Part shown: piece by piece, positions 15,661-49,464 of the stretch
How positions within the stretch are numbered: position 1 is the first letter of the stretch
Layout: every line of letters starts with the position of its first letter
NCBI RefSeq assembly: GCF_947568905.1
Contig: NC_079165.1
Location: forward strand, 79,236,001 to 79,300,000
Direction: 5' to 3'
Length of the DNA: 64,000 nucleotides
Source: Ostrea edulis
Taxonomy: Eukaryota
Notes under the pieces: model-generated
What the model was told of the DNA's origin: nothing
Database searches by the model: none
What the model saw: only the letters and a program-made list of their open reading frames with translations
Program-made: the position numbers and the translations under genes

Positions 15661-18600
15661 TCATCCAATTACACTACTAGCTGAAAATAAATCAATGGCA
15701 GATCGAGTCTTTACGTCATGTATAAGCAGCGAAGTGAATTAAGAATAGATAAAGATTTTTTTTTAAAGAAACTGAATCGCAGATATAATTGTAATATCTG
15801 ACTAAAGACAATTAGATTAGTCTATAAAATTGGTTTTACAGTAAGAAAGGTGAAAATAACAAACTGTGATCAATCTCATTCCTATAAGCAACACAAAATG
15901 GAATGTTGGACAAACACAGACCCCTGGATATACCAGAGGTGGGATCAAGTGTCTAGGAGGAATAAGCATCCCCTGTCGACCGGTCACACCCGCCGTGAGC
16001 ACATATTTTGATCAGGTAGTCGGAGTTATCCGTAATCAAAATAAGAGTGTCATGGACGTTCTAACAATCGGTATGACAGAAGTCTTGAATTGTAGTATGC
16101 CAAACTCTTCCTTACTAATTTCTTCGCTTGGGCAATATAATTCTCTTTTCAATAAGAAGTCTGAAATTCTAGTATGACAAACGCTTACTAATTTCTTCGC
16201 CCATGCAGTCTTCATCTATCCTCCCGTCGCCGTCGTTATCTGAAACAGACATGTTTATTGGTTAATCAGAATATTAACATTCTTCTCCATTGCTACATTC
16301 GAGGAAATCCTCGATAAGATTATAAAGATAATGCAATTAAACCTACAACAGAACTATCTATTGCTTAAGGTAGTGATTGCATGGGTTATTGAATTTAAAT
16401 CTTCTTTCTTTTTTTTTTTCTTTTTCTTTTTTCTTTTTTTTTTGATTTTTGATTTTTACGTATTTTGTAGTTGATAATATCTGTAACTCATTATGAAAGT
16501 ATCATATATGGTTTTCACGAAAATTTTGACGCCATGGTTGTCATAGTAACCCCTCTTGTCGACTTTCCGTAATAAATGGTACGGGTATTTCAGATGGTGT
16601 TTAAAAATGATACAAAAGGGGTAAGTGATACAAATTTTATATCAAATTTAAGTTAAAGCCTTAAAAGATATATAATTTGTATTAATATGTCCCTTTATTT
16701 TCCTATGAAGTAGAAGCAGGGCTGCTTATGAGCAATTTCGCAATTTTTAGAAGGCAATTATTCACCAAATCAGAATTATTTGCACCCCCTGAGAAATTAA
16801 TGACCAATGAATTTTTTTTCTAATATGTTTTAACATATGTTAGTAGGAATTTTTCCTGAAAGTATCAATGTTAGTTTTCAAGTTTACTATGGCGCTATAA
16901 TCACTATTGTTACCCCTCCTTACATAAATGCTGTGGTGATAATTTCAATAAATATGTATCTTACATTAACGGCAAACTGACAACTCAACTGTATGACAAA
17001 CGGAATGATTTCAGCTTCTCCATCGTCAACTTCCCATATTTATGTAGCAATATTCCATTATCACCTGCATATGGTGTTTATATATCTCAACTGATTCGAT
17101 ATGCAAGATCTTGTTCTGTGTATAGTAAGTTTTTAAATCGAGGTAAGCTACTGACAAACAAGTTGATGGTACCGGGATTTCAACAGTCTCGATTGAAGTC
17201 AGCATTTCGCAAATTCTATGGTCGTTATAACGATCTACTTCGTCAGTACAATCTCGCATTGGGTCAAATGCTGTCTGACGTGTTTCATAACGATCGTTAA
17301 GCCGTTCTTGGCACACTGCTTTTGACTGCGGATAACTCCGTTTACCTGATCAAGATATAGGGCTCACGGCGGGTGTGACCGGTCGACAGGGAATGCTTAC
17401 TCCTCCTAGGCACCTGATCCCACCTCTGGTGTGTCCAGGGGTCCGTATTTGCCCAACTATCTATTTTGTATTGCTTATAGGAGTTATGAAATTGATCACT
17501 ATTCGTTATCTTCACCTTACATGCATTTATTTTAACTCGTATTAAAACTATAAAAATGTTTTGATGTTATTATTGAATTTATTCCATATAGAATGATAGT
17601 ACTTTTGCTTTGGAGATATTTTTATTACTTTCTGTTTAAAATTACTGTATATTCATGCTCTGGAAGTGTATGTTACAAACGCGGGAAGTATATCTCATCC
17701 GATGTAAACTGTGTATTGTGACGTCATGGAGATAATTAAAACATAAGGGATTTTTCATTTGTATTGTATTTTCTTTGTATATTTCTAAATATATTTTCAC
17801 TTTATCCTGTGTCTGGTTATAGCTAACAAGTCTTTGTTTCCATCGTCTGTCATTATTACTGATGCTTAAGCGCTTCACGTATTCCGGAATCGAAAACGAA
17901 AATAGTTTCTTTTTAGATACTACATGAATACACCACGTGATGCCTTGCAATCACAACCTTAATCAATCTACTACCGTATAGCGGGTTTATTCTGCGGGTC
18001 TAAAATTTGGCTGAAAGGTATGCTAATAATTTTAGCGGAATAAATTTTGGCGTAGAGGGAAGAGTTGTCTCTCTTTCAAATTCTGAAGTCGCAATTGGGT
18101 GCATATTTGGCGAGTGAAATTTTGGCGCAAAGCTACATGTATCTAACAGCTAAAATAAGACAAAATCATAACCCCACGGAAAACCGCAAAACGGTATATA
18201 AATTGACATTACATATTTTTTCTGTTTTCAACTTTAATCAGCAGAGAAAGGTACACAAAATGAGCAGGGGTGAAACAGTTCATCTCGTGACGTACTAATT
18301 ACCCAATCAAGCGACGAACTGTTTCCCGGTCACGTGAGAAACTATTGCCCGATTTTTCATGTCTACTCGGGAAACAATCAAAACTATTGTACCGAGGTAC
18401 GAGTCATTACCATGGGACAATAGTTTTAACTGTTTCCCGAGTAGGCACGAAATAATTGTATTCTACATAGATTTCATTTCCTTATCTGTCGAGTTCGAAA
18501 AAAACCACCAATCTTTGAAACCCCACATGAATTGCTTCAAATTACAATGCACACCAGAAATCATAATCCGTTACCTTTTCCGACAGATGACAAATCTTGG

Positions 18601-46889: not shown

Positions 46890-49464
46890 GAAACTCTTGA
46901 CCACTACAGTCTTCATCTATCCTCCCATCTCCATCGTTATCTGTAAACCAGAAATCGTAGTGGTTTCAAATACAATGTACAATTATACCATGAATTTGTT
47001 TATTTAGCGGGTGTAAAATCCATGAGAACATTGGTGTGATACTTGTTGTTGCGGAATGCTGACAGCATTGCCCAGGCAAACACAAAATGTAAATGCTCGC
47101 CAAATATGCAAAATTGTTTGTAGATGATAAGTTTTTCAATACTAACTTGGCATAACCTGAGAGATATTTCATACCATCATTAAAGCTAAAAAGATATATT
47201 TTTCGGTTTTTACCTTTTCCGTCGCAGTCTTCCTCGTCAGTACTTCCATCACAATCATTGTCCACCTCATCTCCTTTCCTCATTTGCGGGGCATCACAAG
47301 TTGGGGTCGGGCTTGTAGTAGCAGGAAGATGCTAAAACAAATGTCACTGCCGTCAAATACCATCACAGTTGTCGTAAAATAACCACACTGTCGTAAATAC
47401 AATTACAAATGTCGTGAAACAAAATCACACGTGCCGTCAAACACAAACACTTGTTCTTTAGGTAAAACCATACTACCCGCCAATACAAATCACTATGACT
47501 GTAGAGTACATATGTTGAATGATTGAACCGGTTTAGGTATGATTTTGATTACGACGTACATAGAATGGATAATCTTACCGTTTACCCTAATAATAACTAC
47601 GATGCGCATGTGGTGGATAATTTTACCGGTTGTTGGTAAGGGTAGGAAGATAATGCATGCTAATAAGGTTCGATTTTGAGCAAACATTGACACACATTCT
47701 CGTGATAGGAATTAACGCTCCAGATAAAGTTCAATAAATGATATGCATTGTCATGAGAAGATAAAAAAAAAAAAAACGATTTGTGATTAATCTCACAATT
47801 CGTTGTTAAGAATTCAAAATTGAATTAGGCCAAACACGGACTCCTGGAAACACCAGATGTGGGACCTAGTGCCCAAGAGAAGCAATCATCCCCTGTCGAC
47901 TGGTCACACCCGCCGTGAGCACTATCTCTTGATAAGGCGAACGGATTAATCCGCTGTCAAAACCAGTGTAAAAAGAACTGGCACAAAACACGCAGACAGC
48001 ATTATACAAAACAAAGCATACAAAACACCTACATTTACAGGATTAATTGGCTTGACAAGAAAGCCAATCGGAAATCCATACGATTCCACATGAGCTCTAC
48101 CGAATAGGATCCCTCCAATGGTGATATTGGGGTTGGTGTGGGTGACAGTGTGGGTTCCGACGGTAATATTGACGTACCCCCCTACCATATGGGTTCCCGG
48201 GATATGCACGTACTTCTGATTGTGGGGCAGTGGGTGTCCGTCAAGAAGTAGACCTCCTTTTTGATGGCTTTTTATGACAAACATGAACTGATTTAAGTAC
48301 TGTCCATTTGAGTACTCCGGCGTGGTAAATGTGTAGTCATTGCCGTACTGCTCAATGGGAGGAACAGTGATCATTGAGGGGTCGATGTTTTCCTTGCTGA
48401 AGGCTTGGGTCTTGGAGAACTGATACACGGCAATTGGTTCGTTGGCCTTGACATGAGAATACAGGGAGGAACTGTATGATTTTTGTACGTAGTCTCCAGC
48501 GTGGGGAATGGTGAAGTTATCATGGAAGATCGTACCATTCAGTCTACCTGTGACGTTTATCTGTGTGTTGTCTTTGCTGGCCACAAATCGGAACTCATCA
48601 CCCACTGTTCTCTCTGGAATTGGTACTGTTGCGAAATTTTTCCCCCATGCTTGTACCGGCATCAACATCTCCGTCAGATGATCACGTGATCCGCCAGTAT
48701 GACCCACTATTGTTTTTTTATTTCCACTTATGACTCCCACAGGATGACTTGAAATCACATGACTTCCTGTTAGATCACCCACTGAACTGATTTGAAATGT
48801 TTGGAATTTGTCCATTGTGACGTTTATCCAGTCATTTTTGTTATAAACGTGGTTATTGTACGTGACCTTTACCCAGTCGTGATTTGGGAGCTGAATTGAC
48901 ACTTGGGTACCGTTCGCTATGGAGATAACGGCGAACACACAATAATAATAGGCTGGGGTGTGGGAGATTGTGTAATACTCTGTACCCAGGACGTCTGTAG
49001 GCAGGGCCAGGTAGACATCGTCAGAAGCCGTCTCTCTGTTTACACCGTAAACGGTGATCTCAGCATCTGCAGTTATTCTGATGGCTTTATGGACCAACTC
49101 TGTGTGGTTCAACCGGAAGTGGGGATCAACTGCCACTTTATGGACAACTCCACGGGTCACCACGAAGGACTGTCGTATGCTGGGGTTTTTGGAGCCCGGT
49201 GAAGTGACGTGCACGTGCACAGGGGCATGGCTGGCGGTGGTGACAAATAGTTCTGGACTAATGTCATTCCTATGAGCGAGATTATCTAAAAATGCCACAA
49301 CAAACTTTGTTCCCCTGTTATCCAGCGCACCTGCAAGTTAAAGTGGGAAAATTTCAGGATAAAAGCAACATCGTGTCAATATAAGGTGAGACTAAGAAGC
49401 GTGTGTATTTCTTACAGTACGCCAGAGACAAGAGAGATAGACCAAACCACAGAGAGCCCTTCAT
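46890..49464 (-). CDS. Paralogue D: divergent secreted IgGFc-binding-domain protein (exons 49464-49416; 49330-48039; 47331-47214; 46940-46890; last exon unresolved), >503 aa
   Basis: Signal exon MKGSLWFGLSLLSLAY(C); 85-bp intron 1; exon 3 HLPATTSPTPTCDAPQMRKGDEVDNDCDGSTDEEDCDGK; exon 4 DNDGDGRIDEDCSGQEF with a GTGAGT donor; TATAAA at 49513-49508. Confidence 0.8.
47760..47950 (-). mobile_element. Degenerate Penelope-like 3' UTR fragment in intron 2 of D
   Basis: CAAACACGGACTCCTGGAAACACCAGATGTGGG...CCCCTGTCGACTGGTCACACCCGCCGTGAGC. Confidence 0.65.

What the first reader, a model, noticed from the sequence alone, without database searches (positions are those of the whole stretch)
15661..49464. 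Four-member cluster of compact secreted IgGFc-binding-domain genes hidden by tiny exons
Seen: each gene has a 46-49-nt signal-peptide exon, one ~1.29-kb domain exon, then 88-118-, 51- and 20-nt exons with conserved phases. The ORF track shows only the large exon. Established: vertebrate FCGBP carries this domain ahead of long vWD arrays. Here it is a stand-alone ~500-aa protein with an acidic Cys tail. Inference: a lineage-specific birth-and-death family of mucus, shell or immune secreted proteins.
Basis: partly seen in the sequence, partly recalled or inferred. Interest (0 to 1): 0.75.

Follow-up and report, generated by a model that had tools for sequence, protein, structure and literature searches.

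The report
Flat-oyster secreted FCGBP-N gene cluster
This stretch of the flat oyster (Ostrea edulis) genome holds three intact genes and one dead copy of a small secreted protein made of the poorly understood "IgGFc-binding N-terminal" domain plus an acidic tail; the gene models are correct, but they are already machine-annotated and belong to a large, ancient family of unknown function.

Summary
The window is Ostrea edulis chromosome piece C2:79.236-79.300 Mb.

The fourth copy (B, plus strand) is a pseudogene. It has a stop in exon 1, at least 8 frameshifts, 2 stops and a ~140-nt deletion in exon 2, a 338-nt repeat inside exon 3, and no exons 4-5.

The genes are not hidden. My spliced C and D models equal RefSeq XP_056010931.1 and XP_056011017.1 residue for residue. 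A is LOC130051518, though that model lacks the signal-peptide exon lying 5.8 kb upstream.

The architecture is not lineage-specific. Domain plus DNDCDG/DGDG tail recurs in mussels, pearl oyster, an annelid, a bryozoan, amphioxus and a Methylomicrobium bacterium. This genome holds at least 75 PF17517 exons, none near a vWD exon.

Function is untested. A secreted calcium-dependent binding protein is my best guess. The frog-skin peptide L/D-isomerase, a member of this domain family, is the interesting rival. No oyster RNA run was available.

The scan noted a related membrane-anchored FCGBP-N cluster elsewhere in this genome (s1-279228).

The parts
25974..26019 (-). Gene A exon 1 (46 nt): MNFLWRMFILLPLAH + 1 nt, GT donor, TATAAA ~25 nt upstream. 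Not used by the RefSeq model of A.
   Evidence: The flanks are colinear with C's exon 1 and promoter.
18894..20185 (-). Gene A exon 2 (1292 nt), the PF17517 domain exon
18629..18716 (-). Gene A exon 3 (88 nt), first tail motif GIDNDCDGEVDEEHCDGK. The first tail Cys is replaced by Tyr.
16189..16239 (-). Gene A exon 4 (51 nt), second tail motif DNDGDGRIDEDC
15661..15680 (-). Gene A exon 5, coding part (20 nt): ..SSVIG, stop
   Evidence: It matches the C-terminus of RefSeq P0214.
30151..30196 (+). Pseudogene B exon-1 relic, TGA at codon 5 (30163-30165)
31750..32872 (+). Pseudogene B exon-2 relic: at least 8 frameshifts, 2 in-frame stops, ~140-nt deletion
   Evidence: Unitigs from four DNA runs match with 0-2 differences at single-copy depth.
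33061..33489 (+). Pseudogene B exon-3 relic, split by a 338-nt high-copy insert (33127-33464) flanked by GATG/GATG. No exon 4 or 5 follows.
39995..40040 (-). Gene C exon 1 (46 nt): MNSLWRVLILLPLAN + 1 nt
37333..38621 (-). Gene C exon 2 (1289 nt), PF17517 domain
37049..37136 (-). Gene C exon 3 (88 nt), GCRTHAMTIGDEIDNDCDGEVDEEHCDGK
35859..35909 (-). Gene C exon 4 (51 nt), DSDGDGRIDEDCMGEEI
35554..35573 (-). Gene C exon 5, coding part (20 nt): ..SSLVG, stop
   Evidence: The joined product equals P0003.
49416..49464 (-). Gene D exon 1 (49 nt): MKGSLWFGLSLLSLAY + 1 nt; TATAAAT ~45 nt upstream
48033..49330 (-). Gene D exon 2 (1298 nt in RefSeq isoforms; a second GT donor 6 nt upstream would give 1292 nt), PF17517 domain
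47214..47331 (-). Gene D exon 3 (118 nt): Thr/Pro linker plus CDAPQMRKGDEVDNDCDGSTDEEDCDGK
46890..46940 (-). Gene D exon 4 (51 nt): DNDGDGRIDEDCSGQEF. Isoform X1 reads through its donor.
44455..44468 (-). Gene D exon 5, coding part (14 nt): PIIG, stop (isoform X2)

Best explanation
This is a tandem cluster on Ostrea edulis chromosome piece C2 with three functional paralogues (A, C, D) and one dead copy (B).

Shown from sequence:
- Each intact gene encodes a ~53-kDa protein with a cleavable-looking signal peptide and 6-8 N-glycosylation sequons.
- Residues ~20-445 form one all-beta module containing PF17517, the 'IgGFc-binding protein N-terminal' domain. In the model, a TM1070/CUB-like jelly-roll fold matches two separate parts of it.
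- A ~50-residue acidic tail follows, carrying the motifs DNDCDGxxDEE and DxDGDGxIDED with 3-4 cysteines.
- Domain plus tail is one ancient unit, shared with bacteria and many invertebrates.
- The genes are under purifying selection.

Inferred:
- The proteins are secreted and act outside the cell as calcium-dependent binding or scaffold proteins.
- The jelly-roll modules would bind a ligand, probably a glycan or another matrix or mucus protein.
- The DxDxDG-type tail would bind Ca2+ and, through its cysteines, fix or cross-link the protein.
- They do not bind IgG, which molluscs lack; the name is inherited from human FCGBP.

Confidence by layer: gene models and architecture ~0.9; secretion ~0.8; binding or scaffold function rather than enzyme ~0.45.
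For: Copies and domain.

Exon maps, canonical splice sites and shared phases.

Match to RefSeq: my spliced C and D models are identical to XP_056010931.1 (P0003) and XP_056011017.1 (P0001). A's 3' exons match LOC130051518 (P0214).

Pseudogene B. Its sequence is reproduced in four DNA runs from two studies.

Selection: A-C dN/dS 0.27 (dS 0.19); A-D 0.07; pairs with B 0.42-0.56.

A spliced transcript of the same five-exon plan exists in a mussel. Contig L001 aligns in five blocks to M. edulis genomic locus L002.

Tail conservation from a Methylomicrobium protein to amphioxus and bivalves. Twelve invariant positions (six Asp, Pro or Asp-Pro, six Gly) and near-invariant His/Glu/Trp.

Structure: AlphaFold model mean pLDDT 86, all-beta, tail disordered. 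TM1070 (1nc7) matches residues 242-345 (Z 9.6) and 19-129 (Z 7.7). The CUB domains of alpha2-macroglobulin and C3 match at Z 6-6.7. ESM Atlas neighbours are all PF17517 clusters, including bacterial ones with type IX secretion sorting domains.

No VWD exon lies near any listed PF17517 exon in this genome.
Against: No oyster RNA or protein evidence was obtainable. The run search returned only DNA-like runs, so expression, the use of A's upstream exon 1, and the tissue are all unknown.

The binding or scaffold function is inferred from fold type and motif only. Fold matches are generic beta-sandwiches with Z under 10.

Polar residues that are invariant or nearly so (D121, D202, D233-H234-x-x-E237, D333, H410, H414) across bacteria and animals would fit a catalytic or metal site as well as a binding site.

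The only biochemically characterised member of the domain family is an enzyme (PMC3325411, PMC3195878).

PF11617 is below its cut-off in the window genes, and the tail is modelled with low confidence.
Confidence: 0.55

Rival explanations
1. The proteins are enzymes: peptidyl-aminoacyl L/D-isomerases like the 52-kDa frog-skin (Bombina) enzyme, or another His/Asp-dependent activity. They would modify secreted peptides in the secretory pathway or outside the cell.
For: - The Bombina isomerase is a secreted 52-kDa glycoprotein related to domain H of human FCGBP (PMC3325411; PMC3195878). It is hit at 2e-101 by an IPR035234 protein (PMC11237159).
- The oyster proteins are the same size, secreted-looking and glycosylatable.
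- D233-H234-x-x-E237, H410 and H414 are invariant or nearly so from bacteria to animals.
- The frog enzyme is DEPC-sensitive, which points to histidine in the active site.
- Molluscs make many D-residue peptides, and the gene for their isomerase is not reported in PMC11277431.
- Oyster and mussel C-termini end in hydrophobic-hydrophobic-Gly, with or without an R/K run. This looks like an amidation signal, typical of regulated secretory granules (inference).
Against: - The frog/human 'central region' is said to hold two conserved His and a Cys pair. In oysters and mussels the Cys pair seen in bacterial, echinoderm and other members (C..x8..CDH) is absent, and the SGH position is Asn.
- At least 75 copies per genome is unlike a dedicated processing enzyme.
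- The Aplysia activity is blocked by Cys alkylation, yet the oyster domain has a single Cys.
- The frog sequence could not be fetched, so residue mapping is untested.
Confidence: 0.15
2. They are innate-immune recognition or effector proteins (lectin-like opsonins) that diversify by tandem duplication.
For: - Tandem birth-and-death with pseudogenes, and a large multi-cluster family.
- Jelly-roll/CUB-like modules resembling complement and alpha2-macroglobulin CUB.
- Another note on this genome describes membrane-anchored FCGBP-N genes.
- A PF17517 gene appears among differentially expressed genes in a mussel transplant study.
Against: - dN/dS is 0.07-0.27. That is plain purifying selection with no sign of diversifying selection at this resolution.
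- There is no expression or challenge data for these genes.
- Fold matches are generic.
Confidence: 0.15
3. They are shell-matrix or biomineralisation proteins whose acidic tail binds calcium carbonate.
For: An acidic, Asp-rich, Cys-bearing tail with pI ~4, and a secreted protein.
Against: The same tail is present in amphioxus, a bryozoan, an annelid and a bacterium that make no such shell. It is short (~50 aa) and motif-like rather than a long poly-Asp run. No shell-proteome hit for this compact form was found in the papers searched.
Confidence: 0.07
4. The cluster is an assembly or haplotype artefact, or these are the front ends of long FCGBP-like mucin genes.
Against: - A and C differ at dS 0.19 (12% of residues) and have introns 1 of 5.8 kb and 1.37 kb, with different flanks.
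- B is seen at single-copy depth in four independent DNA runs.
- All models end at in-frame stops in small exons that match RefSeq.
- No VWD exon lies in the window or within ~0.9 Mb of any listed PF17517 exon.
Confidence: 0.02

Closest known systems
RefSeq models for Ostrea edulis: XP_056010931.1 'IgGFc-binding protein-like' (gene C), LOC130051889 isoforms X1/X2 (gene D), LOC130051518 (gene A)
   Same: C and D (X2) are identical to my spliced models. A shares exons 2-5.
   Different: RefSeq's A starts at an ATG inside intron 1 and has no signal peptide. The homologous signal-peptide exon lies at 26019-25974. No protein for B turned up in the word searches.
Human/vertebrate FCGBP (IgGFc-binding protein)
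   Same: It has the N-terminal PF17517 domain (PMC11237159).
   Different: Vertebrate FCGBP continues into many vWD-C8-TIL units (established knowledge; PMC11237159). The oyster genes stop after a ~50-aa acidic tail, and no VWD exon is nearby. IgG binding is irrelevant in a mollusc.
Bombina skin peptidyl-aminoacyl L/D-isomerase
   Same: A single ~52-kDa secreted glycoprotein made of this domain type (PMC3325411, PMC3195878).
   Different: The frog enzyme is cut out of a multi-domain polyprotein, and its central region is reported to hold two His plus a Cys pair. Oysters keep D-H-x-x-E but lack the Cys pair.
Amphibian PRIT glue proteins (PMC11237159)
   Same: IgGFcBD domains without vWD units, in a secreted protein.
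   Different: PRITs carry several tandem IgGFcBD separated by long disordered, O-glycosylated repeats. The oyster proteins have one domain and a Ca-motif tail.
PF11617 (Cu-binding_MopE, 'putative metal-binding motif') and DxDxDG calcium loops
   Same: The tail motif D-N-D-C-D-G-x-x-D-E matches the C-terminal half of the PF11617 profile. Some relatives carry PF11617 in precomputed annotation.
   Different: The window genes score 14-25 bits against a cut-off of 27. Metal binding was not tested.

Membership tests
PF17517 IgGFc_binding (FCGBP N-terminal domain) family | Match to the Pfam profile above the gathering score (25.6 bits), over nearly the whole profile | tested here: met
   202-208 bits, profile positions 1-296 of 297, for A, C and D. 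Pseudogene B scores 119.8 bits with a stop inside.
Vertebrate FCGBP / gel-forming mucin-like proteins | PF17517 followed by repeated vWD-C8-TIL units | tested here: not met
   The genes end at stops after the tail exons. No PF00094 hit lies in C2:79.236-79.300 Mb or within ~0.9 Mb of any listed PF17517 exon (both lists are lower bounds).
[quoted passage not shown] | Short charged n-region, 9-11 hydrophobic residues, small residues at -3/-1 | tested here: met
   By inspection only, since no SignalP was available. The sequences are MKGSLWFGLSLLSLAYC/ALD, MNSLWRVLILLPLANC/ALD and MNFLWRMFILLPLAHC/ALD.
PF11617 Cu-binding_MopE motif | Score at or above the 27-bit gathering threshold | tested here: not met
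   14.2 bits (D), 20.6 bits (C), and 25.2 bits for C's tail alone. Relatives P0028, P0112, P0160 and others carry it in precomputed annotation.
Peptidyl-aminoacyl L/D-isomerase (Bombina type) | Central region with two conserved His and a pair of Cys (PMC3195878) | tested here: inconclusive
   Oysters keep D233-H234-x-x-E237 but lack the C..x8..C-D-H pair seen in bacterial and echinoderm members. The frog sequence could not be retrieved to map its residues.
Peptidyl-aminoacyl L/D-isomerase (Bombina type) | Catalyses L-to-D inversion of residue 2 of peptides | not testable with these tools
   This needs a biochemical assay.
PRIT (amphibian glue proteins) | Several tandem IgGFcBD separated by disordered O-glycosylated repeats | tested here: not met
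   There is one domain per gene. Only D has a short Thr/Pro linker of ~10 residues.

The most novel reading that the evidence does not exclude
The compact PF17517 proteins of bivalves, including A, C and D, are the missing molluscan peptide L/D-isomerases, or a related His-dependent peptide-modifying enzyme. Their conserved C-terminal hydrophobic-Gly(-Arg/Lys) end would mark them as amidated cargo of regulated secretory granules, where they would act on neuropeptide or toxin precursors.
Probability: 0.08. Interest if true: 0.8.

Novelty: already known. Interest (0 to 1): 0.25.

Why it matters
As a gene find it adds little, because RefSeq already carries these models and the Pfam family is known.

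What is worth keeping:
- The RefSeq model of gene A probably misses its signal-peptide exon.
- No protein was on record for pseudogene B.
- The FCGBP-N domain and its DNDCDG/DGDG acidic tail form one ancient unit, shared by bacteria and many invertebrates.
- A flat oyster has at least 75 such exons, none next to a vWD exon.
- The domain family's only characterised enzyme activity, peptide L/D isomerisation, has not been tested in molluscs. D-residue peptides are common there, and the enzyme's gene is not reported in the 2024 paper I read.

That last point makes an open question directly testable with cheap recombinant proteins.

Tried and rejected
- RNA evidence. The one run search on D (44300-49600) returned four runs holding 72-94% of the words, introns included, so these are DNA; none is on record as RNA. 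I used the single read-laying run on B (30000-35900) to check that its lesions are real. Oyster splice junctions could therefore not be verified directly.
- Solved structures by sequence: no PDB chain matched at E <= 1.
- Foldseek against PDB gave only multi-beta-sandwich noise, TM 0.09-0.17.
- VIA-align's best matches were TM1070 and CUB-like modules, with Z below 10. I make no claim that the fold is new, since single domains were not folded separately.
- Atlas feature search with PF17517 excluded returned nothing.
- Three word-based protein searches (oyster D exon 2, amphioxus P0077, brittle-star P0093) did not return the Bombina isomerase or any vertebrate member. Residue-level comparison with the frog enzyme was therefore left out.
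- The look-up of encoding contigs for P0003 found no record; the window's own genome is withheld there.
- Rfam scan of the 338-nt insert region gave no family at E <= 1.
- Paper searches for this compact form in oysters or mussels found only vWD-type 'IgGFc-binding/zonadhesin' proteins.
- The haplotype-artefact and long-mucin readings were rejected.
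Full report
**Identity of the window.** The window is G000:C2:79236001-79300000 of an 895-Mb genome. A word search with the large exon of the right-most copy returned a 100% match to 'uncharacterized protein LOC130051889 isoform X2 [Ostrea edulis]' (P0001, 509 aa). It also returned 'IgGFc-binding protein-like [Ostrea edulis]' (P0003, 497 aa). The organism is therefore the European flat oyster.

**The observation.** The ORF list shows three long minus-strand ORFs, at 18810-20135, 37255-38691 and 47946-49298. tblastn adds a fourth, broken copy on the plus strand at ~31680-32947. 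All three intact ORFs match Pfam PF17517 (IgGFc_binding) at E 1e-59 to 1e-61 over the whole profile.

I mapped the small exons by reading the flanks and by placing peptides of P0001 and P0003 on the window:
- Gene C: exons 40040-39995 (46 nt), 38621-37333 (1289), 37136-37049 (88), 35909-35859 (51), 35573-35554 (20, with stop).
- Gene D: exons 49464-49416 (49), 49330-48033 (1298; a second GT 6 nt upstream would give 1292), 47331-47214 (118), 46940-46890 (51), 44468-44455 (14, with stop).
- Gene A: exons 26019-25974 (46), 20185-18894 (1292), 18716-18629 (88), 16239-16189 (51), 15680-15661 (20, with stop).

Every junction is AG/GT, and the phases are the same in all three genes. Joined locally in a script, C and D translate exactly to P0003 and P0001. 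A gives an open 498-aa frame.

**The joined step.** I built the spliced sequences only inside scripts, for lengths, splice-site checks and identity tests. Searches used exon 2 by reference, or the database proteins that proved identical to the models. For my version of A (with the upstream exon 1) the joined product was searched nowhere.

**Copy B is dead.**
- Its exon-1 relic (30151-30196) reads ATG AAT TCG CCG TGA.
- Its exon 2 (31750-32872), read in C's frame, has at least eight frameshifts, two in-frame stops and a ~140-nt deletion.
- Its exon 3 (33061-33489) is degenerate and split at 33127-33464 by a 338-nt insert flanked by GATG/GATG.
- No homologue of exons 4 and 5 follows.

Short contigs from four DNA runs (two studies) reproduce B's exon 2 with 0-2 differences, at the runs' baseline depth, so the lesions are not assembly errors. 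The insert and several flanking blocks have depths 10^3-10^5 times higher and are therefore abundant repeats.

**Not an artefact, and under constraint.**
- A and C are 87.8% identical in protein, with dS 0.19 and dN/dS 0.27.
- Against D, dS is saturated (A-D dN/dS 0.07).
- Pairs with B give 0.42-0.56, as expected for a copy drifting after inactivation.
- A's intron 1 is 5.8 kb against 1.37 kb in C, yet exon 1 and the promoter-side flank are colinear between A, B and C.

In a maximum-likelihood tree, D pairs with a Saccostrea echinata gene. A and C group with a third O. edulis gene (XP_048772736.2), with no Saccostrea partner among the sequences used. That third gene lies 8.2 Mb away at C2:87.47 Mb, in a second cluster with two more intact genes and pseudogene fragments.

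**Already annotated.** Cluster look-up gives XP_056011017.1 and XP_056011016.1 (D isoforms X2 and X1), XP_056010931.1 (C) and XP_056009462.1 (LOC130051518, which is A).
- Isoform X1 of D is a read-through of the exon-4 donor.
- The RefSeq model of A shares exons 2-5 with mine but begins at an ATG inside intron 1 (MPNRIFDINH...), so it has no signal peptide.
- The homologous signal-peptide exon sits intact upstream, with a GT donor and a TATAAA box. Which start is used needs RNA.

**Transcript evidence.** The single run search returned only runs that hold introns as well as exons, so they are DNA; none is on record as RNA. I therefore cannot show oyster splice junctions.

Indirect support comes from a mussel. 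A 1719-nt Logan contig (L001) carries an uninterrupted 500-aa ORF of a close relative (P0023). It aligns to the Mytilus edulis genomic locus L002 in five blocks: a ~67-nt first block, ~1.3 kb, ~88 nt, ~80-90 nt, and a terminal block. It is therefore a spliced mRNA with the same plan.

**The protein.**
- The mature chains are ~53-54 kDa with pI ~5.8-5.9.
- They carry 6-8 NxS/T sequons and are 5.5-6.2% His.
- There is one Cys in the domain and 3-4 in the tail; A has lost the first tail Cys.
- The AlphaFold model, built on a 40-sequence alignment, has mean pLDDT 86 and pTM 0.83. It is all-beta from residue ~20 to ~445, and the tail is of low confidence.
- No PDB chain matches by sequence.
- By structure, the 116-residue Thermotoga protein TM1070 (1nc7) fits two separate parts: residues 242-345 (Z 9.6, 101 aligned, rmsd 3.4) and residues 19-129 (Z 7.7).
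- The CUB domains of alpha2-macroglobulin and C3 fit residues 245-329 at Z 6-6.7.
- Everything else is generic beta-sandwich.
- ESM Atlas neighbours are other PF17517 clusters. These include mollusc forms with TSP1/LDLa domains and bacterial forms with type IX secretion sorting domains.

**Domain plus tail is ancient.** The tail pattern C-x8-(G)D-x-(I/V)-D-N-D-C-D-G-x-x-D-E-E ... D-x-D-G-D-G-x-I-D-E-D follows the domain in:
- oysters, mussels, pearl oyster and a freshwater mussel;
- the annelid Owenia, a bryozoan and amphioxus;
- unnamed metagenomic proteins;
- a Methylomicrobium protein (P0162).

The tail is therefore not a lineage-specific addition. Compact ~490-530-aa forms exist at least in bivalves and amphioxus.

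Pfam's MopE motif (PF11617) hits the window proteins only below threshold, at 14-25 bits against 27.

Twelve positions are invariant across the 40 sequences: D121, P127, D202, G205, G219, D233, G246, D333, P334, G408, G427 and G439. H234, E237, W245, H410 and H414 are nearly so.

Oyster and mussel proteins end in hydrophobic-hydrophobic-Gly, often followed by Arg/Lys (..VIG..IIG..VIGRK..AIGR..FGRR). By established knowledge of peptidylglycine alpha-amidating enzyme, this looks like an amidation signal. That is my inference, not a result.

**Family size.** The genome has at least 75 PF17517 exons. Almost all are single open exons of 400-500 codons, grouped in many tandem clusters. None lies within ~0.9 Mb of any of the 105 listed VWD matches. 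So an FCGBP-like domain-plus-vWD gene is not seen in this oyster, within the limits of lists that are lower bounds. Another note of this scan describes a membrane-anchored FCGBP-N cluster on another piece of the genome.

**Function.** Nothing here tests it.

My best guess is a secreted, Ca2+-dependent binding or scaffold protein. The support is the jelly-roll/CUB-like modules, the DxDxDG-type acidic tail with cysteines, and the relatives on bacterial cell surfaces.

The main rival is an enzyme. The Bombina skin peptidyl-aminoacyl L/D-isomerase is a 52-kDa secreted glycoprotein of this domain family. It is DEPC-sensitive, and its conserved central region holds two His and a Cys pair (PMC3325411; PMC3195878; PMC11237159). 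The isomerase activity of Aplysia nervous tissue still has no gene assigned in PMC11277431.

In my alignment, bacterial, echinoderm and some other members have SG(H/N)xC..x8..CDH(L/I)VE. Oysters and mussels have SGNKK....SRDHLTEM, so the D-H-x-x-E core is kept and the Cys pair is lost. I could not obtain the frog sequence, so I cannot say which residues are its catalytic ones.

Immune-recognition and shell-matrix roles remain possible but have no direct support.

**Verdict.** It is, however, already machine-annotated and belongs to a large, old, functionally uncharacterised family. It is ordinary as a gene find. The small added value is the corrected start of A, the description of pseudogene B, the ancient domain-tail unit, and a testable isomerase hypothesis.

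Noticed in passing
window 33127-33464: The 338-nt insert in pseudogene B's exon 3 is flanked by GATG/GATG. Its summed contig depth in four DNA runs is ~10^5, against ~10-100 for neighbouring unique sequence. Rfam finds no hammerhead or any other family at E <= 1 in 32900-33700.
   Followed up: partly
window 15845-16076, 17196-17526, 26444-26633, 29277-29594, 30612-31290, 33876-34101, 40223-40364, 42924-43437, 47775-47978: A dispersed repeat of ~130-330 nt (75-92% identity between copies, both orientations) surrounds all four gene copies. Where the laid stretch (30000-35900) covers them, these bins have extremely high depth in the DNA runs. It is probably a SINE- or MITE-like element.
   Followed up: partly
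window 13507-14536: A 51-nt minisatellite, ~20 copies, 94% matches. It produces the spurious 296-aa and 350-aa ORFs at 13478-14581.
   Followed up: partly
window 59965-62183; 1807-2399; 3545-4221: Further minisatellites: 24 nt x 92 copies, 46 nt x 13 and 34 nt x 20.
   Followed up: no
window 20186-25973: Intron 1 of gene A is 5.8 kb against 1.37 kb in C, and only its ends align to C. The RefSeq model of A starts inside it at an in-frame ATG and lacks a signal peptide.
   Followed up: partly
window 32124-32125: Some contigs in the DNA runs carry one extra base (G or C) at one of B's frameshift sites. Local depth there is several times the baseline, so these are more likely cross-laid contigs of paralogues A or C than an allele of B.
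   Followed up: no
G000:C2:87420581-87472705: A second cluster of the same subfamily lies 8.2 Mb away on the same chromosome piece. It has three intact exon-2 copies (87427719, 87458481, 87471413) and pseudogene fragments (87420581-87421872, 87441274-87442216).
   Followed up: partly
L002:1-527 and L002:6001-12916 (Mytilus edulis genome): Mussel paralogues are also in tandem. Transcript contig L001 matches the upstream neighbour's 3' end at 99.4% and the downstream gene at 83-94%.
   Followed up: partly
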